Below, piece by piece: positions 8,301 through 63,956 of a stretch of 64,000 nt of DNA. This DNA comes from Paragordius varius (taxonomy: Eukaryota; Animalia; Nematomorpha): positions 7,316,001-7,380,000 of the forward strand of contig OZ176051.1 of the NCBI GenBank assembly GCA_964247055.1, given 5' to 3'. A program made the translations under genes and the position numbers. The first letter of the stretch is position 1. The number at the start of each line of letters is the position of its first letter. The notes beneath the pieces are model-generated. The model did no database searches. It saw only the letters and a program-made list of their open reading frames with translations, and was not told the origin of the DNA.

Positions 8301-11300
8301 GTTTTAAAGGTAATTAAATGTTTCAAATATCTAATATCTTGATGTTCAATTTAAAAATTATATTATTTTTGGATGAAATAATATATATAATTAAAATAAA
8401 GGATTCATTTATTAATATTATTCTCAAATTTAACTGTACGGATGGTCAAATAGGAGAGTTTGAATTTGATTGTTTCCTAATGTAAAGACCGATTTATAAT
8501 AAATTGAAACGAAATATAAAATTTGGAGTCGAATTTATTTTAAAAACAAGTCACTCTGGTAATAGCTCTTGCAATGTGACACTAAAATCGGTTCTTTAAA
8601 TTAATAATATCAAAACCGATTATAATTGAAATAGTTCTGAGCGATTTTACAAGAATTTGTTGTAGGTCTGCGATCTAAAAAATTATATTTTACGAAAGTC
8701 GAACAAAGTAATAAAATTTAACACTTATGAACTTTTGGACCGCGTTATTATAATGGTTCTTTGTATTTTAAGAACCAAACTTTGGAATCGTAGCGGGTTT
8801 TAAATGAAATGGATATTAGACCTATATTGTATTCTTCGGTCTTTCTCAATAGTTACCAACCCCATTGGATTAATGTTATTTGTTTCTCAATCCTGTAATT
8901 ATGAAAAAACCCATAACATAACTAGTGATTTTCTACTCATTCTTCCCAGAAAATAATTAATAATTAATTGTATCTAAATATATATGGTAAATAAATTTGC
9001 GTTTCTTGTTTTATAGGATTAACAGGGGACGTATATTTGGACGAGGATGGTGATCGTATAGCCAATTTTTCTTTACATGGTATGGTTAATGCTACCACTG
9101 GTGTTTTTTCCGAGGTTGGATTATTTGATGGTACCAAAAAACAACTCCGGTTATATTTAGTAAACGAAGCTGGTCAAATTATTTTAGAAAAAGAAGAAAC
9201 AGCAAAAACTCATTTTCCTATAGAATTTCCACATAATTCGATCATAGATTGGTCCACTGGTAGAGCTCCTAAGCCAATTGATTTTTGTTTTAACAATCCT
9301 AATGATCCACAATGCCCCGATACAAACAAAAGATCAAAACTATCAGCTACCTTAACAACATCCTTTTTGATAGTAATCTTTGCTGGAATCATTACAGCAT
9401 GTGTCTTTCGTCAATATAGGTATTACGAATATTAAATAATATAATTATTGTTGTTGAGCTTGTAGTCGGTTATCGACCATTAGCGATTTTGTAGGAAAAC
9501 TTCCTCCATTCGGTTCTGTCGTGAGCTTTTTGAGATAGTTTTTGCAGTGACAATTTGGAAAGTGATAAGATTTCGTCTACCCAGCGAATACGTCTGCGGC
9601 CTCTTCCTCTCTTACCATTTACTTTTCCTAACATAATATCCTTTTCCAAAGAATTGCCCCGAATAATGTGTCCAAAGTAACCGAATTTTTGTTTTATTAT
9701 TTTACCCCGAAGCGTTGTTTGTGCGTTAATTTTATTTACAATGTCGATATTCTTTATTTTGTCCTTCCATGTTATACCAAGTATCTTTCTCCAGCAAAAC
9801 ATTTCAAACGCGTTTATTCTTTTTTCGTCTTCACTTTTGATAGTCCAGCTTTCACACCCGTATAACATGATAGGAAAGATTAATGCATTTACTAGTCGGA
9901 TTTTTGTTTTAAGGGTTATGTCATGAGATTTCCATAACTTGTAGTGTGAGGATAGAGCGCATTTGGCGATAGCTATGCGTCTTCTAATTTCTTGGGAACT
10001 GGAGCTTAAGTTGTTGATTATGCTTCCAAGGTATGTGTATTCGTTGACTACTTGAATTGTTTCGCCATTAATCCGAAGCGAGTCATAGGAATGAGGGGAG
10101 TTGATATGTAAAATTTTAGTTTTGTTGAGGTTTAATGTAAGATTGTATTTTTTGCACACATTTATAAAAGTTCGGAGACTGTTTTCGAGGTTTGTTTGTG
10201 AATTTGCTAAGATAACCGTGTCGTCTGCGTAGTGGAGAGTCGTCAGAGTGTGACCCCCTACTTTTATTCCTGGCAGATTTAGATCCCTCATGATACATTC
10301 CAAATATATGTTGAACAACATGGGGGATAAAATGCAGCCTTGACGCAGACCTATGTTCATTGGGCTCCAAGAGGTTGGGCCATGCGGGGTGTTAAGTGAT
10401 AGGTAGGAGTTGGAGTATATGGATTTAATTAGTTTGATTAAGTGATCGGAAACTCCTATTTGTTTAAGGGCCTTCCAGAGAATGTCATGTTGAACGGTAT
10501 CGAAGGCTTTAGAGAAATCCACGAAACATAGGTGTAGCTCATTTTGGAATTCACAGTTTTTTTCCATTATCCATCTAAGGTTTGAGATCATGTCTCGGCA
10601 TCCTCTTTTTTCTCTAAAGCCTGCCTGTGTCATTGATATTTCCGGTTTGACATATGGTTGTAGACGGTTTTGTATTATTTTTAGGAAAACCTTTGAGGTT
10701 TGATTGATCAATGCTATTGTACGGTAATTTTCACATAGTTTAGGATCGCCCTTTTTGAATATAGGGACCACTAGTGATTTGTTCCAGTCCGTCGGGAATG
10801 TCGCCTCGTTGAAAATTTTTTGAAATAACGAAAGAATTAATTTTATGGGAATGTGTCTTTGTAACTCGGTAGGGATATCATTGAATCCTTCTGCTTTGCC
10901 GGTTGATGAATGCTTCAGGGCCCATTCAATTTCTTCTTTTAGTATAGGAGGGTCATAAGTTTGTTCAGAGTTCATGGCAGTTATATTTGATTGTTTTGAG
11001 AATAAATTTTGGATGTATTCTTCCCAGAGTTTAATTACTCCTTTTTTATCGGTTAGAAGTTTTCCGTTTGAATGAGACATAGGACCTTTGTATATTTGTT
11101 TTTTGCGCGGTTGAATGTCTTTAATATAAGAGAAATAGTTGTGATTAAATTTAGCAGCTTGCTCGAGGTTAGCGCAGATTGTATTATAATGAGATTCTTT
11201 GTCAAATCTTATGCTTTTTTGTAGTTCATTATTAATATTTTTGTACTCAAGGGGAGTGCCCTTGGATTTTGCTACTCTTCTCTGTTCAATTAGGTCGATG

Positions 11301-14300
11301 CTTTGTTGTGATATGGTGAATTTTTTGTTTTTTGTTGTGGCGGGCGGTATATATTCTTTAGCTGTTTCGATGGTAATTTTGTGAATAGTAGACCAAAGAT
11401 CATCTGTGTTCAATGTTTCGTATTTTAGGGATTCAAATTTATTGTTAAGGATTGGAGTAAAATCGGCAGGTATAAGTTTGTAGTTCAATTTAGTTTTGGA
11501 AAAGTTTTTTTGCGGCTGAGGAAGTTGTAGCTTTATTTTGATCTTGGCCATTAATAGGTTATGATCTGAGTTGCAGTCTGCACTCGAGTAGCACCGGATG
11601 TTTTGAAATGAGCTTTTGTATTTTTGCATTCCTAATATGTAATTTATCTGATTCCTGTGTTTACGACACGGTGAGGTCCAGGTGTAGAGCCGTCTCTTAG
11701 GTTGTTTGAAAAACGTGTTCGCTATAAAGAGATTGTTTTGTTGGCAAAAATCAATTAGCCTTTCACCACGGGGGTTTTTCACTTTACCAAGGCCTTTTCC
11801 ACCGGTGACCTTGTCTGTTTTATCGTTAGCTATGATAGCGTTAAAATCGCCGATGATGAAAGTTATGTCTTTCTTGGATGTTTCACAGAGAGCCATTTGT
11901 AATTCATTATAGAACTTTTCACATTCGTCTTCGGGTGAAACACTCGTAGGGGCATAGATTTGATATATTGTTATAGCCTGGGGTCTGGTGTTGATTCGTA
12001 GGGATATAATACGATCGGAGATAGGTCTATATATATCAGTATGTTTGGCAAGATTATTCGATATTAAGAAACCGCATCCATTTCGTTTGAGTTCCCCGCC
12101 AGAGTTATAAAACGAGTAATTGTCGTATATTTTGTGTGAGTTATGTTGCATATGAGTCTCCGACAGCCCCAACACATGGATGTTTAAACGTTTCATTTCG
12201 CGAATTATTATATCCAATTTGTTATCTGAAGTCCCACGGGTATTCCAGGTGGCCATATTTAATTCTAAATTACGGGAGCTTATTTTAGAATTATGGCTTT
12301 CCATGTAGGAATTTAGTTTAGTGGTGGTGTATTGAGATATAGGAATAAATAGAAAGAATCAGTATTATATGTCCATTGATGTTTAAGAATGGTTTTTAGG
12401 GAATGAAATTGTCGATGAAAATTTTGGAGTTGTATGTTCTGTAGAAATAATTCATGTGAGATTATAATTCTGAGTGATATAATTTCTTCCGGATAATAAA
12501 AGTGATAATAAATTGATGAAGATAATGAGATAAATTCTATTTATCACCGAATGTGAACAAGATTTCCTATAAAATCAAAAGGTACGCGCATCTCGGGAGT
12601 GAACATACCAAGTTCTTCTCCGCGCCTGTAGCCGATCATGAAAAAGTATATATCCAATATAATTATAATTTTACAAATTAAAACTGTAAATTATTTTTTC
12701 ATTTTGCCTATAAAACTGAAAAATATATTATAAAACTTGGATAATTAATATGGTCATTTATTTGTGATGTCCCTATCAATTTATAATATTAGTATATTAT
12801 CACTAAAACATTTACATGTAGCCAGGTGTTGTCAAAGTCTTTACGCTCAACATGTATAGATAAATAAATCATTTATTTTATTCAAATTATTATCAATCGA
12901 CTTCTATATATTTCGTGCATCAAGCTATATATGAATTACTTAAGTGCTGCTCTGCTAGAATGTGCCATATTGATACTATACCATTTTTCATGCAAAAACA
13001 TCATTTTTTCAACCAAATGCAACATTTTTTTCAACCAAACGCAACATTTTTTCAAGCAAACGCAACATTTTTTCAAGCAAAGACATCATTTTTTCAAGCA
13101 AACGCAACATTTTTTCAAGCAAACGCAACATTTTTTCAAGCAAACGCAACATTTTTTCAAGCAAACGCAACATTTTTTCATCCAAACGCAACATTTTTTC
13201 AACCAAAGACAACATTTTTTCAAGCAAAAACAACAATTTTTTAAAAATTAAAAACCATTTTTTTTATTTTAAGACATATTAAATTTAAAGTTAATGGAAA
13301 TTAATTTTAGCGTAGAATTATGATTTTTATTATTTTATCATAAATATGTGATGGTATGATTGATTTTCAAACAAAATTTTGCCCATAATTGCATTATTTA
13401 TATTATATTTTTTCTTTTACAACAGTTTCACTAAATCAATAAATTCAACTTGCGCTTTAAGAGTGTCTTGTTTAAAGTTTCTTTCATTTTTTTGCAAACA
13501 ACCGTTATTTTCGTATGTAATTATCTATTTTTTTTAATTTAAACTAATATCTTTATTTATTAGTATTTGAATCAAAAATAATATTTTTATAGTAAAAACA
13601 TCTCTATTTGTTTCGAACTAATTTTCTTTAAATCAATATTATTAACTTATTGATGTTTTAAACTAAATATTACGATTAATAACCCACAAATCCTAGATGT
13701 TTAATAATGTTAAATTTTTTATAAAAAATAATATTGATATACGGTTCTTATGAAAGAAATGGTATTCCCTTAAAAGTTTAGGAAATAAAGAAAATAGGTT
13801 AATGATAGGATAGATGAATATAATATTGCTTGATTAATAAAAGTTAGAAGCAAAATTAAAATATTGAAGGACCAAATTGAAGTGTTCTAGGACCAACTTT
13901 AAATTTTCAAGGACAATTTTGAAGCGAAAATGTATGGACTGATAAGGTTAAACTAAAGTTGTAAAAGAATAAAATAATATAAATAATGCAATTATGGGCA
14001 AAATTTTGTTTGAAAATCAATCATACCATCACATATTTATGATAAAATAATAAAAATCATAATTCTACGCTAAAATTAAGTTCCATTAACTTTAAATTTA
14101 ATATGTCTTAAAATAAAAAAAATGGTTTTTAATTTTTAAAAAATTGTTGTTTTTGCTTGAAAAAATGTTGTCTTTGGTTGAAAAAATGTTGCGTTTGGAT
14201 GAAAAAATGTTGCGTTTGCTTGAAAAAATGTTGCGTTTGCTTGAAAAAATGTTGCGTTTGCTTGAAAAAATGTTGCGTTTGCTTGAAAAAATGATGTCTT

Positions 14301-17300
14301 TGCTTGAAAAAATGTTGCGTTTGCTTGAAAAAATGTTGCGTTTGGTTGAAAAAATGTTGCATTTGGTTGAAAAAATGTTGCATTTGGTTGAAAAAATGAT
14401 GTTTTTGCATGAAAAATGGTATATGTGGTAATATTTACATATCGCCAGGTCAGAGTGCAGGCACGGAATTCTATTGAAAGGTGTTTTTACTGGTTTTTCT
14501 GTGTAAGGGGTGTTGTAGCAACTTGGCCATATCTTCTGATCCATTCCGGCCATTTTCCGACTAATGAATGGTTTAAATAATTTGTTTTTTGGCTTAAATG
14601 TTGTGCATTAACGGTATAAGTGAGCTTCAATAATTTTTATTTGACAATATTGCTCTGCTTCCACTAGTCATAGAGTATTACCTTTTTTCCGAAGTAATTT
14701 GGTTTTGATGTTTAGAAACCGGTTGGTAAGGTAAAATTTACGCTACTTCCCCTGGTTTTATAAAATAAAACCTGTTTTCATCATCGATCACATTAATTAC
14801 AAAGGATTATGTATCATAACGTTGAAGAGATTTTCACAAGTCACCTTCCGAATTATTTGACGTTTTCAAATTGTGTAGAACCCGTTCATTGATCTTTTAC
14901 ATTCAAAGATGGGTTCTGATTGTTTTTTGTGTCAGATGTAATGCTTCAACCAATTGCCGTTGATATCAAAATGAGTCATCTTCAAATAGCTTTACACATT
15001 ATCGTCTCCGCAATTGTATAGTGTCCAGCAGAGTGCCAACCCCCGTACAATGAAATCAAACATTTAAATTTCAAAACCATGTTTCACGTGTTTTAATCCA
15101 TATGCATCTACCAGCAAACGATTCATTTTTCTTTTAATATAAGAAAAGCAATGCTTGCTGTAAGTGACATGATTACTGAATGATAAAAACAAGACTCTAA
15201 CTTTTGGCGGATTTAACTGTGTGTGTGTTAGTGAACAAAATGGCTATGTCAAATATCGTCTGCTTACCTTTCACTTAGTTAAACCGGTGATATGACTACT
15301 AGTATAAATATAAATTTCAAAAAATAATTAATTAGGAACTACCAATCAAAACGTTATATAACAAGCGAGGAGTGGAAAATCCTATGGAATAACATTCAAA
15401 TCGCTCATGTCGGAAACATTAGACAAGTAATCTTCATTAAATTAACTTTTGGTCGTTTTCGCAATTTAATAAATTAAAAAATATATGTTGGTGAAATCTT
15501 GGATTACAAAATGCCAGGGAAAGCGGCGTTAATTTAGGAAACTTATTTTAAATTTGTGAAATAAAAAATTAAAATTGCGTTGTGACAATAATTAATTACT
15601 TTACCGTATTTGCATACGGGAAATGACATAATAGCCTCATTAATTAAAAACTCACCACCATTTTTATATATAAAGATGTATTAGGTTAACTGTAGGAAAC
15701 ATAAATGATTTTTTATTATTTATCACTGTAAACTGGAACAAGTTTTTAATTTATGCATAAATTTTTTTTAATATCCATATTATTTCAATTATAATTGAAA
15801 ATTAATCATTATTAAATAATGTCTCTAAACCAGGGGTATCCAACAATTGGCTTTGCGCGCAGCTTGAAATATACATGGGCATTAATTAATATTTTATTAG
15901 ATTTGAAACATAAGGCTGTAAAATGTAAACACAATATAACATTTTTGTGTAGTTTGTTGTCAATTAGCCCGATTTATTTGGATACCCTTGCTGAACCCTA
16001 AATCAAAATAAATATTATATATCTGAAAATTAATTAATTTGTCCTCATTTGTTAATAAATGCCTTTTTATTTTAAAATCTAAAAGAATAAAATTTATAAG
16101 ATTATTGATAACCACCATCTTATATTTTTGTGTTTAGAAACAAATTCAAACAGGAAAATATCAAGGTAAAATAGTTTTCATCAAAAATCTTGCCGCTGAA
16201 CCGAAATTCTCCATTACTCCTGCTTTGCTTGAGGAGATTAACGCCATTAAAAGCATCAATCATGAAAACTTGGGTCATTTTATTGGGATTGCGGTAGAAA
16301 AAAATCGAAATGCAATAATTGTACAATTTCTTGGAAAACGCAACTTATCCGAATTGCTGACGAAAAGCAACCTAAGATTATCTTGGGATATTAAATACTC
16401 TATTATAAATGACATGGTCAAGGTAATAATTTTATTTGTAAATGGTGTCATTTTATATAAAAAAATTTTATTGAATATTTAATATCTTTTAGGGTATGAC
16501 GTATTTGCATTCCAGCCAAATAATATGTCATGGAAGATTGCGCTCATCCAAAGTCATTGTCGATAACCGTTTTGTAGCTAGGATTACTGGATTCGGCCTA
16601 CCGACCATTTATCACAAAAATGTCACTTTCAGCAATTGGGCTGGTAGGCCAAAAAAATATATTAGAGAACTTTTTTGGATTGCACCAGAATTCTTGAGGG
16701 GATCGAATGGAAACGTAACGACGAATAGAGAATCTGATATGGATCAATTTCGATCTTTTCGCAGCAATGTAAGTTTCAGTAACCGTTGTAAAAGATATGA
16801 CGGGCATCGTAGCCAACAGGACCTTGGTTCAAAACTCATGAGATCATGCAGAAGTTTGCAGCACAGTGTACTTGGTAACGCATCAAAATGGTGGAAAAAT
16901 GGTATTCCCAAACCCAAATATTTTTATTGTAATAAATACAAACGTAAGAAATCCAAAATAGCTAATCATACAATCGATGATCAAACAACTGTTACTCAAT
17001 GGCCTCCGTACTTGCGGAAAACGTCAAGTCAAGCCGGAGATATCTACAGTTTTGCCATTATAGTTTCGGAACTTATAACGAACAAACCACCATTCTATTA
17101 CAATGTATTACAGATTGCAAATTTGTATGATGCAACGAACCCAAAACCGTTGCCCCCAACAACATCAAAAAATGATATTAATAAAGATTTAAACCAACAA
17201 AGTAAATTTATAACGTTTATATACTAAAATATCCTCAAAATTGGAGCTTAAGTTTATTAATCCCTACTCAGAGGCAGAAACAGAGAAAAAAAGTCAAAGT

Positions 17301-19822
17301 CTATGTAGAATCATAATCGTATAAAACCTATAAAAATGTCTTCTACAATTTTGATGATTGGCCCCCTTAATATAAACTAAAAACTTATTTAGAGTTATCA
17401 ATTGAATGACATTTTATGATCAATTAAAAGTGTAAGAATATAATGGTTAAAATATTTTACTAAAGCCCATAAAAAGTTTTAATAAATTAATTATATTACA
17501 AACAGAGGCGTAGCTAGAGGGGGGAAAGGGAACTGATGCACCGGGCGCCATAGTTGAAAGGGAGCCGAATTTTAAATTTTTTAATTTTATTTAGAAAAAA
17601 ATAGATATTAAAAAGTTATTATTTTAAGTAAACACATAAAGAAATCACCCATTTATGAGTGACAATGACCTCGATTTGAATATGATTATTTTTTTAAAAT
17701 GGAAGGGGTCGCAGGGAAGGGGAGGGGCCCATTACGAATTCATGCACCGGGGGCCAGAAATGCAAGCTACGCCTTTGATTGCAAATGTGAGATTTGAATA
17801 TATATATATATATATATATATGTAAATGATCAGATATGCAGTCTTTATACAACTATCGATACATGACGGAAATGATTGATGTAATAAAACGGCATGACAC
17901 ACCTTTGTGTAGACCATTTATGGGACCACAACAGCCACAAACTTTGGGATCTTTCGGGAGTACGTTCAATATTAGTTCCGCTTCATCCAATTTAACTGAT
18001 AGTGGTTGGATGATTAATCAAACATCAGGGCTTTTGGAAATGGAGCCGCCTCCAAAAAATAATGTACTTATCCAAAACTCGACTCAATTGATGATAGAAA
18101 ATGATACAATTACTGCTGTACAGATATCTAATCAACAAGATACCATAAGTCAAATAATAGAATTAATATCACAATGCTGGGATGAAATGCCTGAGGAACG
18201 ACCTCGTTTCCCTGACCTAGGATTGATTTATAAAAATATCACGAAACAAATTGATTTTACCAAATTCAGTGAAACCTTGTTGGATAAAATGGATCATTAC
18301 GCTAATAATTTGGAGAGTATTGTAGCTGAAAAAACCGAAGCTTACGTGAAAGAGAAAGAGAGGGGTGATGCAATACTGTACCAAGTTCTTCCCAAGTGAA
18401 ATACTTATGCATACTTTTTTTGAAAAATAGGGGGGCAATCAATACGTTAAAATTATTATTTTTTTAATTTTATATTATTATAATGATTTAGAATTATAGC
18501 GGAAAATTTGAAAAGTGGCGTTAAAATTGAACCAGAAGAATTCGATAGTGTTACCGTATACTTTAATGATATGACAAATTTTATGCAAGTTTCTACTACC
18601 AGTTCAGCCATCGAAGTATAGAATAACACATTAATATTAAAGATTGTGACGTTTTTAAACGACATGTATATACAGTTGGATTCTCTGGTTTCTCAATTCG
18701 ATGTTTACAAGGTAAGTGTTCTGTGTAAGAATATAAATTTTTAAGATTTACCCAGTGTTCGGGCCCAAAACTTTATACTTTATTACAGAAGCGCTTGATA
18801 TCTAAAAAATTTCAAAATGGTTCCAGATATCATTTTTTTTAACTTTTTCATTAAAAAGGGTAGATTTGATTTTGGTCCTTTTTATTTATTTTTGCGGTTT
18901 ATTATTCACATTCTAAAATAAATATTCATTAAAATATAGTCACAAAATCGCATTATCCTAAAAGGAAGGAAACAAAACCAATATTATTTCTAAAAAATTA
19001 AAACGACAACCATTGTAAGTCAACCGTCAGAATCAAAAACGGCTCCAGTTCTAATCCCCGCTTTTATATTTTATAATTTAATTTGATGCCTCTATATATT
19101 ATGCTCCTAAGAGTTAAATGATCATAAATTAATCAGAACAGCGTTAATAACCAATATGTAGGTTGAAACGGTGGGTGATGCATATATGGTAGCATCTGGA
19201 TTACCAATCCGTAATGGAATTATGCATGCCAAAGAAATAGCCCGATTAGCCTTACGAATAAGGGAAGAAATGTCTGTATTTAAAATTAAACACCGGCCAA
19301 CAGAGTCTGTTAATATTCGAATAGGTTTCCACAGCGGTAATTTCAATTTTACATTATATTAAATATTGACTTTTAGGAGGATTTATTAGCTAAAATCAAT
19401 CTTTTTGTTGTTTAAACCTATTTTGTTATTTATGAATTGGGTAGGGCCTTGCGCAGCTGGTATTATTGGACGCAAAATGCCAAGGTACTGTTTGTTTGGA
19501 GATACGGTCAATACTGCTTCAAGGATGGAAACTAACGGAGAAGGTTTAACAATATATTTTTTTAAAGAGTTTTGAGGAAATTTAAAACTTTTATTTCCAT
19601 TCTCATTTTGTAGCATTCAAAATTCATATTAGCCAGGCGTCAAAATTGTTACTTGACCAAATAGGTGGGTTTGAAACCCAGGATAGAGGAATGGTTGAAA
19701 TAAAGGTTAACATAATAATAATTTGGTTTAATGTTAACTTAAATATACATTTTTCCAAATAGGGCAAAGGTCTGATGAATACATTTTGGCTGATAAAAGA
19801 AACCTCAGAATCAAAAACCTAG
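5306..19822 (+). CDS. Receptor-type guanylate cyclase (natriuretic peptide receptor NPR-A/B / Gyc76C-like), 14 exons, ~1400 aa
   Basis: Exons 5306-6329, 7475-7854, 8180-8309, 9017-9419, 15336-15426, 16138-16422, 16493-17201, 17834-18395, 18492-18615, 18643-18711, 19162-19336, 19445-19543, 19614-19705, 19763-19822; all GT-AG, phases compatible, total 4203 nt. Domains: N-terminal hydrophobic signal; ANF-receptor-like ectodomain ([25 protein letters not shown]); juxtamembrane Cys pair ([11 protein letters not shown]); one TM helix; kinase-homology domain ([33 protein letters not shown]); coiled coil; cyclase core ([33 protein letters not shown]) with the GTP-specifying Glu and Cys. Confidence 0.95.
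5699..5728 (+). repeat. (AAT)10 microsatellite encoding poly-Asn in the guanylate cyclase ectodomain
   Basis: Read directly; in frame within exon 1. Confidence 0.95.
9449..12655 (-). mobile_element. Full-length RTE-clade non-LTR retrotransposon in intron 4 of the guanylate cyclase
   Basis: Single 944-aa ORF 12304-9470 with an APE endonuclease (ATWNTRG, LGLSET, GDFNA, SDHNLL) and RT (RPISL-like [34 protein letters not shown]), plus an RTE-type C-terminus ([21 protein letters not shown]). ~350-nt 5' UTR, short CAA/TAA tail, 11-bp TSD AATATAATTAT at 9438-9448 and 12656-12666. Confidence 0.95.
12982..13236 (+). repeat. Tandem array of 12 x ~21-bp units (CATTTTTTCAAGCAAACGCAA)
   Basis: Units counted directly; variant units end in AGACAT, TCC and ACC. 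Confidence 0.95.
14144..14418 (-). repeat. Tandem array of 13 x 21-bp units, inverted copy of the 12982 array
   Basis: Same variant units in mirror order, plus one extra AACCAAATGCAA unit. Confidence 0.95.
15831..15990. mobile_element. hAT (Charlie-like) MITE
   Basis: TIR CAGGGGTATCCAA / TTGGATACCCTTG; left flank CTCTAAAC resembles the Charlie target; TSD poorly preserved. Confidence 0.55.
17503..17777. mobile_element. hAT MITE in guanylate cyclase intron 7
   Basis: TIR CAGAGGCGTAGCT / AGCTACGCCTTTG; 8-bp TSD ATTACAAA/ATTGCAAA (7/8); GC-rich subterminals. Confidence 0.8.
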
Positions 19823-19895
19823 ATTAGTGGAGTATATTTATATAGATTTTATTCATTTATATACACATGTATCATTTACATATGAGTAAAAATGT

Positions 19896-25800: not shown

Positions 25801-28800
25801 AGGTTTTGCATAAACTTTAAATATTCCTTTTTCTAAAACAAATATTAATATTTTCTAAAAATAAAATTAGATAGGAGAGAGTTTCAATTACCAAGATTTA
25901 TGAACCAGAAATTTAGAAGGCATTTCGAAAGATTAAATTTAAAAACCATAATATGTTTCTTATATATTATAATCAGCATACAAAAATAATGACAGTATTA
26001 AAAAAATAATTTCTATTTTATTTAATACTTATATTTTTTACAGGAAAAATGTAAGTAATAAAACCTCGCGATAAGCATCATTTAATCGCCCATACTGCAT
26101 CCAATTAAGGATAAACGTAAGAAATGGATATATACAAGCTTTGTAAATATTCTTTAACATAACTTTCCAATCTTCATGTACGGTTCGTTGAATCAAATCA
26201 TATATGACGTTGAGTATTTCGGTCCCCTTTAAATCTAATGTTATATTAAAAATTTTTAAAAAACTAATAAAACAGTAAGAAGGTGAAAAATGAATAATAT
26301 TTATTTATAATGCTAAATTGGAAAAGTATGTATAATTAAAGAAAAAAGTTCTAATATTCAATTTAACTGTTTTTTACCTTGACAAGCCAAAACAAGAGTT
26401 AACAAAACTTCCATTTTGTGTTGAATAGGTATGGTTATGGCTAATAACCGTTGAACACTTAACAATGGATTTAATATAAAGCTATTTTCTTTTACATTAT
26501 CTTTTTTTATATCATCATTCTTAGAGTGCTGCTGTCTTTGTTCTTTGTATTTGGCGAAGTCAGATTCGACCTAGTTTAAGAAAAAAATGACAAATTCATA
26601 GATTTTTGACATTTCCTTAAATATTTTATAAAAAAAGGTACATGATTATTTGGGCAATAATAAGGACAACAAAATTTATATATAATAAATATGTGGTATA
26701 CAATTAAACCTCGTCATTTTTAATAATAGTTAGTGTTTTGCCAATAAACTCCAGTTTAAGAAAAAATAACGGTTCACAGGATATATATTAAAATTTTACT
26801 TACACATTCTCGTATAACAGTTACAAACTCATGATAGAATGACAATTCATCGTTGACACATTTCTTAAATACCTATAAATATTTTAACCATAAATTGATT
26901 ATTCATCATATCGAATCAAGAATCACTGAACCTATATTAGTTTAATTTAAGAGCATTATAAATACTTTAATAAATGATAAATAATATTCTTTCAAAATTA
27001 ATTCAATTAAGATAATATTCCTTCAGACAAAAGCACATTCTGGGAGAAAATTTATTTTAAAATTAAACCAGAAAATTAAATTAATAAAATAGGAGAAAAA
27101 AGTAAAAATCTAAATAAAAATAAGTTTGATAAAAAAATTATTTAACAAAATATTTTATTTACATTATAAATAAGTCCCTTTTCACCAACATTTTGTATAT
27201 CATGAAGAAAATTTTGTATTTTATAATATAACCATCCACATTGTCCAATCCTACATATTTGGATCCAAGTCGCAGGATGCATCTTTTTCCTTATCTAAAA
27301 TATTTAATTATATTAAACATAAAGTTGGTAGATAAACGTAATTTTATATCTTTAAAAAGAATTAAAAATTTTCAAGTTCCTATTTTAACTAAGAATCTTA
27401 AAAGAAAAGCCACAAGAATATTTGATATCAAAATGCGAAAACACCTGATTAAATATTTAACACTTCGATTCAAATTGGGGTATCTAAATACCCCAGACTA
27501 AATTTAAATTTATATTTTAAAAAACTGCTGAAGGAAACGGTCCCAATTTAAATTTATGCTTCTATCCTGATAAATATTATATAAATATGCCAAAACATCT
27601 TGATAAAATTTTGTTTTGAAAAAAAAGCTCCATCTCAAACTACTTCGACGCCATTTTTATTTTAAAAATTTTTTGCAAAATATCGTCTTTATTTAATTTT
27701 AAGGGTAAAACTAAAGCTAATTTTTTATATAAATTACATCTAACATTGATAGAAATAGAAAAAGCGGTTTAGTTTGTATAATTTTTCAATTTTACAATTT
27801 GATAAATGTCACGTTGACTAAATTTTTACCTTTCGGTTTTAGCTTAAAATAAGTAATATCAAGTATTTTTGAATAAAATTTTTTATATATTTCGGTTTAT
27901 TAATGTTAGATAAGTGCAAAATTTTGCCATGGTTTCGATTCCTTCTATATTTTTTAAATAATTTAATTTTAAACAGGCCTGGGGTATCCAACTACCCCAA
28001 TTTGAATCGAAGGACTAAAATGAGTGTGTTGTATCCAAGTGTTAATATATATATATATATATATTTTAGTAACCATATAAAAGCAACAATATAAGAAAAA
28101 AAAGAAGTGTTTGCAGGGTTTGAAATGGGATCTAATCTTACATTAAATATTGTTAATTAATTTGAAAAAAAAATGTGTTCTTATATGCAGATGTAAGGAA
28201 AGGATGATATTCATCATAATTATCACGCAAGAATTAAACATAAAACTTAAATTAGATGTCATGTGTACCTCATTTATTCCCAAATTATTTAAGATGAAGG
28301 GAGGGCAGGTATTTTTGGGGGTTTCGGAACATTTAATTTCCCAATTAAATGGCTTATTTGTAATGTGTAAAAAATTTCCATCAACATCTAACAATATATA
28401 ACATAAGTCGTTTATCAAGATTGTTTCATTGATATGGACCATAAACTGAGGTAAATTATCTATGTAAATTAAATTTTATATTATACTTGATTTTACATCT
28501 AATTGATTATCATAATTATCAAAAACAGTTTCAAAAGGGTTTTCTTCTGGATAATTATTTAATTTTTGCAACAGGTTAAAAGGTGTTGTGATCTGAGGTT
28601 CAAACCTTAAATTTTCGTGGCTAAGCTCCTGAAAATTTACAATTTTTAAAACCTCATTGAAATTTGAGATTGTAGATAAAAGCAATGCCATTTTATCAAA
28701 TAATTTTTGATTCTAAAAAATTAACAAAAACTTACCTGTGATTTGCCTCTCAATAATTTTAATTCAGGTGTTAGATTTATTTTACTAACATGATTATTAT

Positions 28801-28957
28801 GAACATTGCTAAATATATGAAAAAAGTCAACCTATTTAATATATTCCTTATAAAATCCAAATTTTCTTCAGATAAATCTATTATATTTAGTTTTTAATGC
28901 CTAACTTTTATTTGAAATGGATATTGAAAGTTGATTCAAAACATTTGATAAATCCAT
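19896..28957 (-). CDS. TUBGCP3: Gamma-tubulin complex component 3 (GCP3/Grip91/Spc98), 20 exons, ~1049 aa
   Basis: Exons 28957-28906, 28877-28832, 28808-28736, 28712-28487, 28459-28269, 27294-27163, 26872-26804, 26570-26378, 26234-26065, 25653-25507, 25285-25090, 24685-24488, 23932-23724, 22581-22501, 22413-22266, 21802-21714, 21284-20985, 20897-20703, 20632-20546, 20243-19896; total 3150 nt in frame. GRIP motifs: ETILINDLCYILLDVDG, CGWLYYKI, NWMQYGRLNDAYREF, LLEHFEALKGHLLLARGDF, WELFSLKYMIDGPL, HFIQQIQYYLHFEVMECSW; C-terminal LNFRLDFNHYY...RLRSSLTF is GCP3-like. Confidence 0.9.
27461..28041 (+). mobile_element. TTAA-flanked MITE, copy 2 (GCP3 intron 5)
   Basis: Same termini, TTAA flanks and internal sequence as copy 1. 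Confidence 0.8.
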
Positions 28958-29077: not shown

Positions 29078-32000
29078 ATGGCTTTAATAATTTTGTTAAT
29101 TGAAATATTTATCTTGTTTTGTTTGACGAGTTTGGTACTAAACAAGTATGGGAATTGGAAACGACAAAGGATTGCAGTTACATTAGCCACATTATTTTCT
29201 TGGTATTTCAGTTTCATCATAATATCCATTTTACCTTTGGATGTTTCTATGGTAAAAAATATGTGATTAACATAAAATATAGACCACATATTATCAATGT
29301 ATAGCCAAATTTAACGTTTCCACAGTAACCGGAAATATTTTTAACCAGACTCATAATACTTCAATAACAAATGAAACTCTTTATCAAAGCCTATATGATT
29401 CGTGTCAAAAACCATGGAATGTTATATCAAAATCGGTTTTAGTTATTCTTTGGCGCATAGTTTATTGGACATCTCAAGTTTTAACATGGTATTTTTTTTG
29501 TTTGTTTATTTAAATTAAATGCATTTTTTAATTAAATAAACTTTTTATACAATGTCCGAATTTTAGGACCATTTACATTTACCTTTAATCGTTACAAAGA
29601 ATATTATTATAATTTATAAATTTAGTATACTCCAATGTCAATTTTGGTCATTTTGAACTATTTATAATATATATAAAATTATTTGATATGTTATACGAAA
29701 AATTTTATGTGGTATAGATACTTATTTATCTAATACCAATATAGAAGTTTTATTTTTATATAAGCCTTAAATTCTTTTCCTAGGTTATGTTCTTTGAACA
29801 TATATATATGGCACGTTTCGGAGAATCTAAAAAAATATTTTTGAGTAGGCCTTTGTATTCCATGGTTAATTATACCTTTGTAAATCAACTATTGTATATA
29901 TATATATATATATATTAATATTGGCTTTACTCATAGTTTATGTATTTTTATTCAAAACCAAAACTATATTTTTAATTATCCATAACATATTAAATATTTA
30001 ACCTTTGTAAAATCACCAATAAAACATTTACCAAAATTAATATATACTTATATCTTCATACTAATTTTGACCATTTTATCATTTTGTAACATTTTAAATG
30101 TATAAAAATTCACAATCGAAATAATAATTTTACATTTTTTGATATCATCAGGCTTATTATACCCATGATGCAGAGTTATGCTAAGGCAGGAAATTTTACC
30201 ATTTTTGGTAAAATAAAGACAGCCCTGTATGAGAATCTCATATGGTACGGGACTTACCTAACCATTTTCATAGCCATTTGTATTTATATTGGATTAAAGC
30301 CTCATCTACAAATTAATACGTAATATTCCTCATATATTTATTAACCAGTAAAGTTTGAACATATTCATATATAATATGTTTTCATAACTTATTTTTGGAA
30401 GTAACAAGCGCAGCATATGTGGTACAAAAAAGTTTTTTGAATATTTTAGCAAGCAATAAATTCGGGTTAAACGGTTTCAAAATTTTAAATTTTTCAATTT
30501 TTAATACAATGGTGATGACATTTATATTAAATGTTTACAGCAAACAGAAGTATGTTTTTTTAGATTTTTCTTTGGATTAGCAAAATATTTTACGATATTA
30601 TATGTTTATTTTTTAGATCATTATAGTAATTTTGCTGTAAAAACTTAAGCTCTATATAAATTTAATGATAAAACGAAATTAAAACCAACTTTTGACTAAA
30701 ACAATTGGACAAAACTTAGCAGAAGAATTGACTTGGAAAACCAAAAACATTAACTCTCTTTTTAAATTTTTATTTAACAAATTATTTACCTTTTATTTTA
30801 CCATATACGGCAAAAATTGAAATTATACACGCAAAATGTCTTAACAGAAAGACAATTTTTTTCAAAAAACAATCATATATATATGATTTTTCTTATATAA
30901 TTTACAGTTAAAATATATGATAGATTGTGATACCAATTTATATGACTATTGATACTTTGCTTATTTGTAACAATTAAGTATTAAAAAGTAGAACATTCTT
31001 TTTCTATAAATAATATCTGTGTTTATATGTTTTTACGTTTTGCCTGTTTTTTAATTGAATATCTTTTATTCCTTCCCTTTTTAGTTCGCAATTATTGCTA
31101 ATCATATCATCAGCAAGTAATACATGGGGATTAATATTGCTAGTTTTGCTCCTGGGTTATGGCCTCATTCAAATCCCACGCAGTGTTTGGTATTATTCAG
31201 CTTTCGTAGCCGGGGGTATAAGAGCCCGGTTAGAGCGATCTTTCTATAAGGCTGCAATCATTTACCCTTTGAAACAGGAGGTCCATGTTAACCTTGAAGA
31301 CGTGATTGAGGTAGTTTTATGATTGATTGATTGATTAATATTTGTGCTTGATTGTAAATTTGACGTATTTTGAGTTGATTTTAGATGTTTTTATTTTTTA
31401 AATATCGTTTTAGCTATATTTGTTTTTGTTTTGCTACAATTATGGATTTATGTTAACTTTCAACAAGTAATTGAGATTTAAATTTATAAGAAAATTTTGA
31501 TGTTGGAGAGAAAGATTAATTTTAGTTTTGTTATTAAAAAGTTTGGAAAATTTTCTACCATGTTTTTAATTATTTTATTTTTTTATTAATTTTTTTTGAA
31601 TTACTATCATAAACTTCAAGTTGAGGTGTATTCTGATTAAGGATGTCAGTGGTAAGAATGATTTTTCGGATTTTTCATTAATAATATGTGTGTTATTTTA
31701 AAAATATGATTTTTTGTCATAATAATTAAACAGGATTTTTTATTTAAATCTTTGGAATCTTTGGATATTTAATTATAATTTTGAATATATTTATTTCAGT
31801 TGTGTTTTGATAAATTTTGAATTGGTTGTAAGTTGGGACCCTGTTTTATTCTTCATGGCTAATTCAGCTTTACAGTTTCCAAAAGAATAATTTTTATTTT
31901 ATAATATTTACCTTTTCTGATTAGCTATAACAATTATAGCTTTTTTCCGGCCTTTAAATATTTTTGTGGTGGTTTGGTATACTTCTATGATTAATATCAT

Positions 32001-51809: not shown

Positions 51810-54800
51810 CTCATGAAATTTTATTAAACCCGATTTTGGACGCAGTGTTAATTTAACACTTAGATCAAATTGGGATAGTTATTTAAGTTGATTTATAAAA
51901 AAACTACTGAAAGAAACGGTTTCAATTTAAATTTATGCTTCTATCATAATAATTATAAATCCAAAATATCTAAATAAAATTTTGTTTTGAGAAAAAAAGT
52001 TTCATATCAAACTAGTTGGACCCCATTTTTATTTTACATTTTTGCAAAATATTGAGTTTATTTGATTCTAACGTTAAAATAAAAACTTATTTTTATTAAA
52101 ATTACATCAAATATTGATAGTGTATTGTTTTTATATTAATGCACACTTGTCATGTTAACTAAATTTTTGAAATTTATCCATAAAATAATAAAATTAAGTT
52201 TTTTTTTATATTTTGGTGCCTCAGTGTTATACTAACGCAAATTTTGCAATGGTTTCAGTATGTTGTATATTTTTTTTTATATAAAATTTTAAACAGGATG
52301 GGGTCCTAGACCCCAATTTGAATCAGAGGACTGAAATGATTGTGTTGTATCCAAGTGTTAATTTTATGTTTTTCTTATTTAACCATTGATACTTTTGTCA
52401 ATTGTTATTTACAGTTTTTCAGTTTTAATGAGTTAATTCATGTGCATAGTATGTCCAATAATTTAATTTTTGTCTGATTTTACATATATTTTCAAAAAGC
52501 GAGCCTCTGTAAAAAATGTTAATTGGGATGTCTAGACTCTAGAATATATTTTTTTCGTGTCAAATGGTATAATATATAACAATCATTATTAAGTGTGATA
52601 AGTTTCTCTTGAAAATATCATGTTTTAAATAGGGTATACAACTTTAACCAAAAAGTTACTCATAAGACCAAAATTAAAGTGTAGGCTATACCAAAGCAAT
52701 AAAATTACTTTAGAAATTTTGTTCCAGATTCTGTTTCCAATATGAAATTGTAAATGGACGTATGTACTAGGTGACAAGTGTCGCTTTTATGGATATAAAG
52801 AGCTAATATTTATTAACACTAATACTTTTATTGAATAGCATTGTGTGATCAGTCTTATTATCTAAGAGAAATATTTTATATAATTATACTTGATTTACAA
52901 TCTTCAATTACTAAATTAAATTTTGGTCCAGTCGCATTAAATACTGTGGGAAAAGCATAGGGATTAGTTATCGCAATATACAGTAATGATAAGTTTCTGA
53001 ACAAAGAGGATTTTCGCAGAATAATGTAATCTTCGTAAAAATCATAAATGGTTAAAAGACCGTGGTGTTTTTGGTATAAACGTGTCTAAAAATATAAAAA
53101 AATAGAACTGATTAAATTATCAGGTATTTTATGTTAAATTTATATTTGGTGTTTTTATTTATTCATAATTTTTTAAAGAATTATTTTCTTTGTTTGTTAT
53201 CAAGGGTGTAATATTGTTAAACATGCAACGGCCTAGTCAATATGGATACCGCCGACATTATGGCGGATTTTTTTATTTTTTAATATTCCACTAAAAATAT
53301 TAAAAACCACTCATTTCCATAAATTTGTCAATCTGGAAATTGTCAAAATCAGTCGTATATTGGTAATTTGGGTAAAAAGGATGATAAACTGTGGCGTATT
53401 AAACTCGTTATACAAAAACAAAAATAAGAATTTAAAAAAGCACCATTTAGGCAGTCAATAAAGGTTTCTGAACTTTAGCTGAATCGTTAAAAATGATGTA
53501 TACATTTATATTGATATAGAAAAATAATATAAAATGTTTGGATGTTTTGACCGATCAAAAATTTTGACTACCTTTACAATATTTAAACAAAATCAAAAAT
53601 TAGCAAAGATTAAATATTATGGATAATTAAAAATTGATTTAAAAATTATTACCATTTTGTTATATTTACAACTAGCGTAAATTTCGTGCTGCAGCGCAGC
53701 CCGAGGATGTCTTTTGGACTTCTGGGGGGGCTTTTTGAAAAAAGGGATAATAAAATGATCCACGTATGTGGATTATTTCGAAACAATATTTAATAGCTTT
53801 GATCCCATAGGATTTTCAAAACGGTGCATTCATATGGATATATTGTTTATTGGTGTAAAGGCCCCAAGTTGACGGCTAATTACCTTTTTATGAGTAATAT
53901 TTAAAGCCTTTATTGAACTCGTATGGCTTCTTAATTTTAAAAGTTAGCTTCAAAGGGATGCCATTTTTGTATGGCGTCTCAGTCTTAATGGTAGACCCCT
54001 ACCGATAGACCTATATGGAAAAAGCGGTTTAAATTTTTTGCCTTTATAGGGAAAATATTTGGAATCATTCATGAGACCATCGTCTCATGGGTTATTCGAA
54101 AAAATTCCTCAACACTAAATAATCGTTATATGATGGCGTATTTCTAGGGCATAAAGGCCCCAAATTAAAGGCTAATAAAAAAGGCCTGACCTTAATTTTT
54201 ACCTAGTTACGGGTAATATTTTGAACTTTAAATGAGCTCATATGGCATAAATTTTAAATTAGTTCCAAAATAACGCAATTTCTATATAGTGGCACAGTTT
54301 TTGGCGGGTAGCTTCTTACCCAGAGGCAGGTAGAAAAAAGCGTCTGGCAAAATTTTTGTCTTTATATGGAGAATACCTGGAATTATAATGTCCATATGTT
54401 CCTATAACTTGGAAATATTGCTTCAAAACCAAAAAATTGTTATTTGGCAGCGATTTTTGAGGGCGTAAAATCTTTCTTAGCGACTCATTGAAATAACCCC
54501 CTATACTTAAATTTTTGTTTTTTAAGTGGTAATAAATATTTCAGGCCCTTATTGAACTCACATAGTCTCATAAGTTTTCTGAAATTTGGCTCCAAAGTCA
54601 TGCTGTACCGATATAGTCACGCATTTTTACGCGGTTACCCTACCTAGAGCCTATTTAACCGCTAATTTAAAACCGCCGTCTTGAATTTTTGCCTTTTTAC
54701 GGGTAATAATTCAGGGTCTTATAAAACTTATATGATCTCTGAAAATTAACTCCTAAACAACGCAATTTTGATATGGTGGCGCAGTTGTAGGCCGGTAGCC

Positions 54801-61873: not shown

Positions 61874-63956
61874 ATGGTTTTCGTATTATTATCAATATAT
61901 ATTGGAATATCATTAGTTACAGTGCAGCGATCTTACAAACACCTATGCAATATGACGGCACCAATCTTATATCTAAAATTAAACGCAAGGTGTAAATATT
62001 TATTTTTACTGATATATTATTTAATTAAAACAAATTACATTTTGAAGTCTTTTTTCAAGTTAACTTTCTCACAGTTTTTCTTTTAAAATTTACGGTCAAA
62101 AGAGGTAGAGAGCAATCGATATGCCCTAATCCTTTTAAATTAAAAATTCTCATTTTAAATTTAGGTACCAGAGTTGAATTAATTATATGTTATCATATAT
62201 GTAATATATATATTATATTTAGTACGCCGAGGTTAGCCCTTGCGTGGGACGAAACTATTGTACACCATTCCTTCAACCAATCTGTAATGTTGAACGTTTT
62301 TGGAGATTTAAGTTTTACTTACATTTATCATTTGCAACTAAGGGAATACACGAATTTCGCATGGCTCCAAAACTGTTTAAATGCTGATGTATTATTATTA
62401 GTTTTTTAGATATATCCATCATTTTTTTTCATTTCTTATACTGGATATAAAATATTTCTAGTTTTACATTGATGTTAACCCGGATGTAATTGATTTTGGA
62501 TTGAATAATTTACAAAGCAAAAACTATGGGATGACGCGTATGACACGAGCTAACATGACCTTTCTGAAGTTAAAAAAATCAATCATTAGACCCGAGAGGA
62601 TAATGAAAGTATTTGTCAATATTATGTTTAATTACAGTTAAAAGTTTCGTAAACGTGCGACTTTTTTGACTGCACTTAGAAAAATTTTAAGGAAGAAATA
62701 ATAAGTTAGACTTTATAGGGCAGGCATACTCGTTTCACCCCTTGTTTTCTTTACTTTAGCCCAGGGGTGTCCATGCGTTCCACTATTTTTCTGAATACTT
62801 TTGTTATCTTTATATATGCATTATAATATTTCTACTTAGTTACTTCACCGTGTTCGACATTTTACAGATTTGATTTGGGTTAGATTCTAACAACAGAACT
62901 AGTACCACTAAATTTAATGAAAATTTGGATGAATTTTAGACATCTTTACTTAAGCAATATTTTTTTGTATATATCCTTATGAATACATCCGCTAAATTTA
63001 CGATGCGATTCTAGCCTTTTGTGTTCATGGCTCCTTATGCCATGTATCGATTTAATATAACTAATTTTCTATTACTTATTATATTTAATTATATCGGCTA
63101 TCAAAAAATATTATGTTAATTTAGACAAGATTCTATCAATATCACAATGGGCCGTTGATCGTTTACGATATCTATGATGATTATGTTGTTACACGTGAAA
63201 AATTTAATCAAAATGGAAATTTTGCATTGGCATTTATTGGAATACCCGAAAATGTTTATCAGTTACATCGAATCACTGGAATTCCAAGTGTAAATGTTGT
63301 TGTACAAGATTGTGAAAGTATAGCAAAGTTTATAAAAATTTTAACTCAAATCATATTTTTATAAACCTAAGTAATGGTGACATCAATGCGATTTTTTCAT
63401 TAACATATCAACCCTGGCAGGCGAGTGTTAAACTTTTCATGGGTCTTCTTTCATTATAAGATCTTACCCTTTGAATGGGATAAACTGCATATATAATTTT
63501 AGCGAAAAGCTACATTTTTATTATTTTCTAATTACTTCCCAAAATATGAGGATTATCATCGTTTTATATATAATATACAGGAAAATATCCAACTAGTCTA
63601 TTCAACCGAAGTTTTATTGAGTTTATGTTTAGGATTCTTTTTCATCGGGCATACCCTATGTGAAAATATTATCCTCCCTGGACGTTATAATTTTATTCAA
63701 ACAGATTCTGTTGCCAGTGGAATATTTTTTATGTATCTTTTCTTCATTAATCACTTTTTATATTACAATATCTAGTGATGTTCCACTTGAGGTAATAAAT
63801 CGGAGTAATGGTAGATATATTAGCATAAAATATATTTCCATAAATAAATTTTTTGTTGATGGCGATAAACGAACCTTGGTAATGTTTAATACTACAGATT
63901 CTTTCCTACACCCTTTCATAACAGGGAATTTTGTTGCACATATGGATATTGATCAA
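61874..63956 (+). CDS. Uncharacterised multi-exon protein, paralog B (hydrophobic N-terminus); runs off the window end
   Basis: Exons 61874-61989, 62223-62388, 62462-62608, 63125-63317, 63581-63610, 63633-63732, 63776-63956; all GT-AG and phase-compatible. Exon peptides match paralog A (FYIDVNP/FYIDMDP; TRFYQYHNG/TRLYQKHHG; LFNR/LFNK; YNFI/YNFI; VPLEV/IPLKV). No family recognised. Confidence 0.75.

What the first reader, a model, noticed from the sequence alone, without database searches (positions are those of the whole stretch)
28460..28905. A class of ultra-short (22-31 nt) spliceosomal introns coexisting with kb-sized introns
Four consecutive GT-AG introns at the 5' end of GCP3 are 28, 23, 23 and 27 nt (28878-28905, 28809-28831, 28713-28735, 28460-28486). 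The same size class recurs in the guanylate cyclase (27 nt, 18616-18642, splitting the conserved SAIE|IVTFLND), LMBRD2 (31 nt, 29252-29282) and both unknown paralogs (28 and 23 nt at 52862-52889 and 52803-52825; 22 nt at 63611-63632). Each must be removed to keep a homologous reading frame, and the 23/22-nt pair sits at the same position in the two paralogs. These are well below the roughly 40-70-nt minima typical of nematodes, insects and vertebrates, and resemble Paramecium or dicyemid intron sizes. Here they share genes with 1-7-kb introns, so the spliceosome must handle both extremes. This implies a modified splicing machinery (inference).
Basis: partly seen in the sequence, partly recalled or inferred. 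Interest (0 to 1): 0.88.

Follow-up and report, generated by a model that had tools for sequence, protein, structure and literature searches.

The report
Tiny 23-31-base introns, partly verified
Some genes of this AT-rich, transposon-rich animal genome are interrupted by very probably genuine introns of only 23-31 bases next to introns of 57 bases to 6.7 kb. Protein comparison or statistics back four of the nine listed cases, and no RNA could be checked.

Summary
All nine segments exist as stated: GT...AG, 22-31 nt. GT-AG plus a frame join is not evidence here, because such joins are as common at 20-31 nt as at any other length and with control dinucleotides.

- **Pinned by homology (2):** the 27-nt guanylate-cyclase intron gives residue-exact colinearity with human NPR1. 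The 31-nt LMBRD2 intron lies between contiguous LMBR1 profile positions.
- **Statistically supported (2):** GCP3 intron 4 (27 nt, null p about 0.013) and intron 3 (23 nt, a motif met by 0.9% of AG sites).
- **Plausible only (2):** GCP3 introns 1 and 2 (chain p about 0.06, no homology).
- **Unverified (3):** the three paralog introns. The claim that two of them share a position fails, because only the first exon is detectably homologous.

In the cyclase's 3' half the mapped ordinary introns are 57-450 nt, and none lies between 31 and 57 nt. Further 5', the same gene has a 6.7-kb intron carrying a LINE.

A modified spliceosome is not required. Myxobolid myxozoans and Dicyema have published introns this short and conventional splicing machinery.

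Earlier notes of this scan report the same class in more than 50 other places of this genome and call it a relative of the hairworm Gordionus. I could not test the taxon or the RNA.

The parts
18616..18642 (+). 27-nt GT-AG micro-intron in the catalytic domain of a receptor guanylate cyclase (phase 0, in-frame TAG, TTAAT 8 nt from the 3' end)
   Evidence: The flanking exons align to human NPR1 residues 825-864 and 865-887 without a gap. It is the only join that keeps all aligned residues.
18493..18615 (+). Cyclase exon upstream of the 27-nt intron
   Evidence: E 1e-4 to NPR1, query 2-38 = chain 825-861.
18643..18711 (+). Cyclase exon downstream of the 27-nt intron
   Evidence: query 1-23 = NPR1 865-887. 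The next exon, 19162-19338, = 888-946.
9433..16137 (+). About 6.7-kb intron of the same cyclase gene, between the transmembrane exon and the kinase-homology exon. It holds an antisense intact RTE-type LINE ORF (9470-12304) and two inverted 21-nt tandem arrays.
   Evidence: Boundaries are approximate.
29252..29282 (+). 31-nt GT-AG first intron of LMBRD2 (phase 0, TTAAC 12 nt from the 3' end)
   Evidence: Exon 1 = LMBR1 profile 2-57 up to its last residue; exon 2 = profile 62-102. The unspliced frame stops after 4 codons.
29078..29251 (+). LMBRD2 exon 1 (starts with ATG)
   Evidence: PF04791, 53 bits.
28460..28486 (-). GCP3 intron 4, 27 nt (phase 1, in-frame TAA if retained, TTAAT 9 nt from the 3' end)
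   Evidence: It joins a 75-codon open frame to the exon holding the first conserved GCP3 motif. Null p 0.013.
28713..28735 (-). GCP3 intron 3, 23 nt: GTAAGT start, TTAAT 8 nt from the 3' end, run of six T, AG
   Evidence: It fits a motif met by 0.9% of AG sites. There is no homology support for the exon upstream.
28809..28831 (-). GCP3 candidate intron 2, 23 nt (unproven)
   Evidence: Chain p 0.064, codon score p about 0.07, no homologue.
28878..28905 (-). GCP3 candidate intron 1, 28 nt (unproven)
   Evidence: as for intron 2.
28906..28957 (-). Putative GCP3 exon 1 with ATG, 120 nt from the LMBRD2 ATG on the other strand
   Evidence: Unproven: the start could instead be the ATG inside exon 4 (28487-28712).
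52862..52889 (-). Paralog A candidate intron, 28 nt (unverified)
   Evidence: The exon upstream is homologous to paralog B; nothing downstream is.
52803..52825 (-). Paralog A candidate intron, 23 nt (unverified; fits the GTAW...YTAAY...AG motif)
63611..63632 (+). Paralog B candidate intron, 22 nt (unverified; no counterpart shown in paralog A)

Best explanation
These are ordinary U2-type GT-AG spliceosomal introns shrunk to about 23-31 nt.

Shown: two of them (cyclase 27 nt, LMBRD2 31 nt) must be removed precisely to restore colinearity with conserved proteins.

Inferred:
- They are cut out of the pre-mRNA by the normal spliceosome working by intron definition.
- A TTAAY-like branch site 8-12 nt from the 3' AG and 13-19 nt from the 5' GT is used.
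- GCP3 introns 4 and 3 are very likely of the same kind.
- GCP3 introns 1-2 and the three paralog segments are only candidates.

The micro-introns form a discrete minority class. In the part of the cyclase gene that I mapped, no intron lies between 31 and 57 nt. The kilobase introns of these genes are largely transposon insertions. The two size extremes therefore reflect intron shrinkage plus later transposon gain, not two kinds of splicing.
For: - GT-AG ends and stated lengths are confirmed.
- The cyclase exons are exactly colinear with NPR1 across the 27-nt segment, which carries an in-frame stop. The join is unique.
- The LMBR1 profile continues across the 31-nt segment.
- GCP3 identity is confirmed: only GCP3 chains hit. 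The intron-4 join has null p 0.013.
- A YTAAY motif occurs in 5 of 9 candidates against 17% of background GT..AG segments (p 0.01), including all three best-supported ones, always 8-12 nt from the 3' end.
- Only 0.9% of AG sites end a segment with the full motif, yet 2 of the 6 remaining candidates do.
- The neighbouring cyclase introns are conventional GT-AG introns of 70, 96, 450, 108, 70 and 57 nt.
- Introns under 30 nt with conventional machinery are published for two animal lineages (PMC13644364).
Against: - No RNA evidence and no orthologue from a close relative could be obtained for any gene of this window.
- GT-AG joins of open frames are at chance level in this DNA. The motif is not enriched window-wide: 46 hits against 53 +/- 8.5 expected.
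- One motif-perfect candidate, 41413-41441, appears to lie inside an LMBRD2 exon. That judgement rests on my recalled human LMBRD2 sequence, not on a tool alignment.
- The spliced GCP3 N-terminus finds no GCP3 structure.
- The branch-site motif was defined after looking at the verified cases, and n is small.
Confidence: 0.8

Rival explanations
1. All nine segments are real micro-introns exactly as the reader modelled them, including the paralog pair at a shared position.
For: All nine have GT-AG ends and all would give a premature stop or a frameshift if retained. Paralog A's 23-nt segment fits the motif. Earlier notes on this genome report many such introns.
Against: The paralogs are homologous only in the first exon. 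The downstream peptides score at chance (p 0.84). The GCP3 1-3 chain has p 0.064. The background of chance joins is high.
Confidence: 0.2
2. The segments are not removed at all. They are assembly indels or disabling insertions in decaying genes.
For: No reads or RNA could be examined. The cyclase has an odd insertion of about 95 residues in its kinase-homology domain.
Against: A 27-nt insertion pinned by homology would begin with GT and end with AG by chance about 0.3% of the time, by my own estimate from dinucleotide frequencies rather than a tool result, and this happens at both pinned sites. All other exons and introns of the cyclase are intact, with proper splice sites. Indel artefacts are not 22-31 nt long with a branch-like motif.
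Confidence: 0.04
3. The segments are removed by a non-spliceosomal route: DNA elimination like ciliate IESs, or IRE1-type cleavage like the 23-26-nt XBP1 intron.
For: The size range resembles Paramecium IESs and the XBP1 intron (my own knowledge).
Against: The boundaries are GT...AG, not TA...TA. For the cyclase segment no TA pair 27 nt apart exists (sequence). No CNGCNG stem-loop motif is present in these AT-rich segments.
Confidence: 0.02

Closest known systems
Ultra-short introns of myxobolid myxozoans (Henneguya salminicola, Thelohanellus kitauei, Myxobolus) and of Dicyema japonicum (PMC13644364)
   Same: Animal GT-AG introns of about 20-30 nt. The 5' signal is weak (mostly GTA). A residues upstream of the AG are proposed as the branch site. 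Conventional spliceosome components are retained.
   Different: There the tiny introns are the dominant class (median 22-27 nt) in compact, transposon-poor genomes, and they have short neighbours. Here they are a minority class in genes that also have 57-450-nt and transposon-filled kilobase introns. The lineage appears to be a different one: earlier notes say a hairworm relative, which I did not test.
Ciliate micro-introns (Paramecium about 25 nt, Stentor 15-16 nt)
   Same: Spliceosomal GT-AG introns far below the usual minimum. All of them would cause a premature stop or a frameshift if retained.
   Different: Ciliates are unicellular, nearly all their introns are tiny, and they have no kilobase introns. 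This window uses the standard genetic code and encodes animal-type genes such as a receptor guanylate cyclase with a kinase-homology domain.
Minimal introns of nematodes and insects (about 40-70 nt)
   Same: The ordinary short introns of the cyclase gene (57, 70, 70, 96 and 108 nt) fall in this class.
   Different: The 23-31-nt class lies clearly below it, with no intron between 31 and 57 nt in the mapped part of the cyclase gene.

Membership tests
U2-type GT-AG spliceosomal intron | GT at the 5' end and AG at the 3' end | tested here: met
   9 of 9.
U2-type GT-AG spliceosomal intron | Precise removal restores the reading frame and colinearity with homologous proteins | tested here: met
   Met exactly for the cyclase 27 nt and for LMBRD2 31 nt. 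Partly met for GCP3 intron 4. Inconclusive for GCP3 introns 1-3. Not shown for the three paralog segments.
U2-type GT-AG spliceosomal intron | Branch-point-like motif upstream of the 3' splice site | tested here: inconclusive
   YTAAY lies 8-12 nt from the 3' end in 5 of 9 candidates against 17% of background (p 0.01). The motif was defined post hoc, n is small, and it is not enriched window-wide.
U2-type GT-AG spliceosomal intron | Absent from mature mRNA | not testable with these tools
   No transcript of this species could be reached for these genes.
Animal ultra-short-intron genomes (Myxobolidae / Dicyema type) | Introns of 30 nt or less present | tested here: met
   The 27-nt cyclase intron is pinned by homology. 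The LMBRD2 intron is 31 nt.
Animal ultra-short-intron genomes (Myxobolidae / Dicyema type) | Tiny introns are the dominant class (median under 30 nt) in a compact, transposon-poor genome | tested here: not met
   In the cyclase's 3' half, 1 of 7 precisely mapped introns is tiny (27 nt; the others are 57-450 nt). Kilobase introns hold a LINE and a transposon palindrome.
Ciliate-type IES (DNA elimination) | TA...TA boundaries with one TA retained | tested here: not met
   The boundaries are GT...AG, and no TA pair has the required spacing at the cyclase segment.
Nematomorpha (taxon assignment made by earlier notes) | Closest orthologues are hairworm proteins | tested here: inconclusive
   My four searches returned no orthologue. 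Only composition agrees: the window has 24-37% GC and is transposon-rich, against 26.9% GC and 64% repeats in Gordionus montsenyensis.

The most novel reading that the evidence does not exclude
A third animal lineage, apparently a hairworm relative, has evolved a discrete class of 22-31-nt spliceosomal introns. It did so in a large, repeat-rich genome and inside genes that keep kilobase introns. Extreme intron shrinkage would then not be a by-product of genome compaction. Part of the reported 'rampant loss of universal genes' and the low BUSCO scores of hairworm genomes could instead be gene models broken by unrecognised micro-introns.
Probability: 0.55. Interest if true: 0.72.

Novelty: new member of a known kind. 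Interest (0 to 1): 0.55.

Why it matters
**Lower limit of animal splicing.** Introns under about 30 nt were long thought absent from animals. They are published for only two parasitic lineages, both with compact genomes (PMC13644364). A further lineage in which they coexist with transposon-filled kilobase introns would separate intron shrinkage from genome compaction. It would also give a system where one spliceosome demonstrably handles a 250-fold range of intron sizes within one gene.

**Annotation.** Standard gene finders and BUSCO pipelines do not allow such introns. Gene models, completeness scores and gene-loss claims for this group may therefore be systematically wrong. The Gordionus genome paper reports 71.6% BUSCO completeness and never mentions introns.

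Tried and rejected
- **Window-wide length histogram** of GT..AG segments joining open frames, with eight control dinucleotide pairs. There is no peak at 20-31 nt, so this statistic cannot detect the class.
- **Motif scan** (GTAW, YTAAY 7-13 nt from the end, AG). It found 46 hits against 53 expected, so the motif is not discriminating on its own. It also gives a likely false positive inside an LMBRD2 exon.
- **Orthologue and RNA hunt.** A representative search with a GCP3 exon gave only a spurious repeat protein. Word-index searches with GCP3 exon 5 and the cyclase kinase exon gave nothing. Exact look-ups of the cyclase exon-1 ORF and the LINE ORF gave nothing. The LINE ORF gave at most 43% identity, to mite, rotifer and insect RTE elements, so there is no taxon signal.
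- **PDB searches.** Exon 4 gave no hit, and an 80-residue spliced GCP3 N-terminus gave no GCP3 hit. The LMBRD2 exons found no LMBR structure.
- **Paralog comparison** by tblastn and shuffled Smith-Waterman showed no similarity beyond the first exon.
- **Rfam and tRNA scans** of the window found nothing.
- **Rejected readings:** ciliate origin (standard code, animal domain architecture), IES-like elimination and IRE1-type introns (wrong boundaries).

Full report
**What is in the sequence.**
The window is AT-rich (24-37% GC in 2-kb steps, mostly 24-30%). It encodes animal-type genes:
- A receptor guanylate cyclase on the + strand (about 5306-19822). It has ANF-receptor, kinase-homology and cyclase domains.
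- GCP3 on the - strand (about 28957-19896). Only GCP3 chains of the PDB match (E 4e-6; GCP_N and GCP_C Pfam hits).
- LMBRD2 on the + strand from 29078 (Pfam LMBR1).

**How much is chance.**
I counted every GT..AG segment of 15-150 nt that joins two open frames of at least 25 codons and cannot be read through.
- There are 60-90 per 5-nt length bin at all lengths, with no excess at 20-31 nt. Eight control dinucleotide pairs give similar or higher counts.
- In this stop-rich but ORF-permissive DNA, 'GT-AG and restores a frame' is therefore not evidence. Each case needs something that pins the junction.

**The two pinned cases.**
- *Cyclase, 18616-18642 (27 nt).* The upstream exon (18493-18615) aligns to human NPR1 chain 9bcv_A at 825-861, which puts its last residue at 864. 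The downstream exon (18643-18711) aligns at 865-887, and the next exon (19162-19338) at 888-946. The 27-nt segment has an in-frame TAG. It is the only GT-AG join that keeps all aligned residues.
- *LMBRD2, 29252-29282 (31 nt).* Exon 1 (29078-29251) matches LMBR1 profile positions 2-57 right up to its last residue. The unspliced frame stops four codons later. The next open frame matches positions 62-102. The only short alternative uses the same acceptor with a donor 9 nt upstream (40 nt), which would delete profile-matched residues.

**GCP3 5' end.**
- *Intron 4 (28460-28486, 27 nt).* Exon 5 begins with the first conserved GCP3 motif (Xenopus GCP3 residues 242-271, weak hit). The roughly 240 N-terminal residues of GCP3 must therefore be encoded upstream. 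The intron joins a 75-codon open frame to exon 5. Random genomic segments placed upstream of exon 5 allow this in 1.3% of trials.
- *Introns 1-3.* Neither exon 4 nor an 80-residue spliced N-terminus finds any GCP3 structure. A chain from an ATG through up to four micro-introns that is at least as long as the real one arises in 6.4% of random segments. The codon-usage score of exons 1-3 is in the top 7% of non-coding open frames.
- *Intron 3 (28713-28735).* It is nevertheless a near-consensus intron: a GTAAGT start, TTAAT, six T, then AG.
- *Open question.* Translation could instead start at the ATG inside exon 4, with introns 1-3 in the 5' UTR or, for introns 1-2, not real.

**A shared internal motif.**
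- The three best-supported micro-introns all carry TTAAT or TTAAC, with the second A 8-12 nt from the 3' end. GCP3 intron 3 and paralog A's 23-nt segment do too.
- YTAAY occurs in 5 of 9 candidates against 17% of 2,205 background GT..AG segments (p 0.01).
- Only 0.9% of AG sites end a segment with the full GTAW...YTAAY...AG pattern. Two of the six candidates not used to define it fit.
- The motif is not enriched window-wide (46 hits against 53 +/- 8.5). One hit (41413-41441) appears to lie inside an LMBRD2 exon, judged from my recalled human LMBRD2 sequence. It is a descriptor, not a detector.

**The paralogs.**
- tblastn between the two loci finds only the first exon (63125-63316 against 53085-52894, E 6.5e-11).
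It also scores at chance against every open frame of that region.
- The 'same position in two paralogs' argument is therefore not reproducible, and the three segments remain unverified.

**Size classes.**
- In the cyclase's 3' half I placed the introns by homology-consistent GT-AG sites. In order they are 70, 96, 27, 450, 108, 70 and 57 nt. An unmapped intron of about 0.6 kb (17225-17829) lies after the first of these.
- The intron between the transmembrane exon and the kinase-homology exon is about 6.7 kb. It holds an antisense intact RTE LINE ORF of 944 codons and two inverted 21-nt tandem arrays.
- LMBRD2's next introns are about 0.65 and 0.77 kb by Pfam coordinates.
- No mapped intron lies between 31 and 57 nt. 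Micro-introns are a discrete minority, and the long introns are largely transposon insertions.
- The GCP3 and LMBRD2 micro-introns sit at the 5' end, as earlier notes describe. The cyclase one is in the 3' third of the gene, so the 5' bias is not absolute.

- The simplest reading is conventional U2-type splicing by intron definition, with a branch site very close to both splice sites.
- For myxobolids the authors of PMC13644364 found conserved U2 branch-pairing sequence and U2AF1/2. They concluded that conventional splicing suffices, and they cite the same for Stentor. They also report reduced splice-site logos (GTa...AG) in myxobolids and Dicyema, which resembles what I see here.
- A modified machinery is therefore not implied.
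In this window 6 of 9 micro-intron donors follow an A, against 1 of 6 ordinary cyclase donors. That is a weak, AT-confounded observation.

**Taxon and novelty.**
- I could not identify the organism myself. Four database searches gave no orthologue, and the LINE's best relatives are only 41-43% identical, in mites, rotifers and insects.
- Earlier notes on other pieces of this genome call it a relative of Gordionus and report Gordionus introns of 41-49 nt at orthologous sites. The composition agrees with the published Gordionus genome (26.9% GC, 64% repeats).
- That paper has no occurrence of the word 'intron'. The library holds no paper combining Nematomorpha with 'short introns', and the single paper holding both 'hairworm' and 'introns' is a 2013 review on the evolution of parasitism.
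- The kind of feature is published. Its occurrence in this lineage and in a non-compact genome appears not to be.
- The scan has already noted the same class in more than 50 other places of this genome.

**Verdict.**
Genuine micro-introns are present in this window. Two are firm, two are likely and five are unproven. The class claim stands, the paralog argument and the 'modified machinery' inference do not, and RNA evidence is still missing.

Noticed in passing
window 9470-12304 (- strand): An intact 944-codon RTE-type LINE ORF (endonuclease plus reverse transcriptase) lies antisense in the 6.7-kb cyclase intron. Its best database relatives are only 41-43% identical (mite, rotifer and insect elements).
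   Followed up: partly
window 12984-13242 and 14139-14416: Two inverted arrays of a 21-nt tandem repeat (12 and 13 copies, about 90% matches) lie about 900 nt apart in the same intron. They look like the arms of a foldback or transposon-like element.
   Followed up: partly
window 28957 / 29078 and 19820-19898: Intergenic DNA is very tight despite the large introns. The putative GCP3 and LMBRD2 start codons lie head-to-head 120 nt apart. The stop codons of the convergent cyclase and GCP3 genes are 73 nt apart, so their 3' UTRs must be tiny or must overlap.
   Followed up: partly
window about 16730-17020 (+ strand, inside exon 16493-17224): An open, in-frame stretch of about 95 residues interrupts the kinase-homology domain of the cyclase. 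It lies between a PEFLRG motif and an SQAGDIYSF motif, which are nearly adjacent in NPR1 as I recall its sequence. It could be a lineage-specific insertion or an unrecognised stop-free intron.
   Followed up: no
window 41413-41441 (+ strand): A 29-nt segment fits the micro-intron motif and joins open frames. It lies inside an LMBRD2 exon whose residues appear to align with conserved LMBRD2 sequence (from my memory of the human protein). It illustrates likely false positives from motif-based calls.
   Followed up: partly
window 47568-47595 (+ strand): A motif-perfect 28-nt GT-AG segment joins open frames of 59 and 47 codons in an unannotated region. It is a possible further micro-intron of an unknown gene.
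   Followed up: no
micro-intron donors across the window: The last exon base is A at 6 of 9 micro-intron candidates, but G at 5 of 6 ordinary cyclase introns. The sample is small and confounded by AT-richness.
   Followed up: partly
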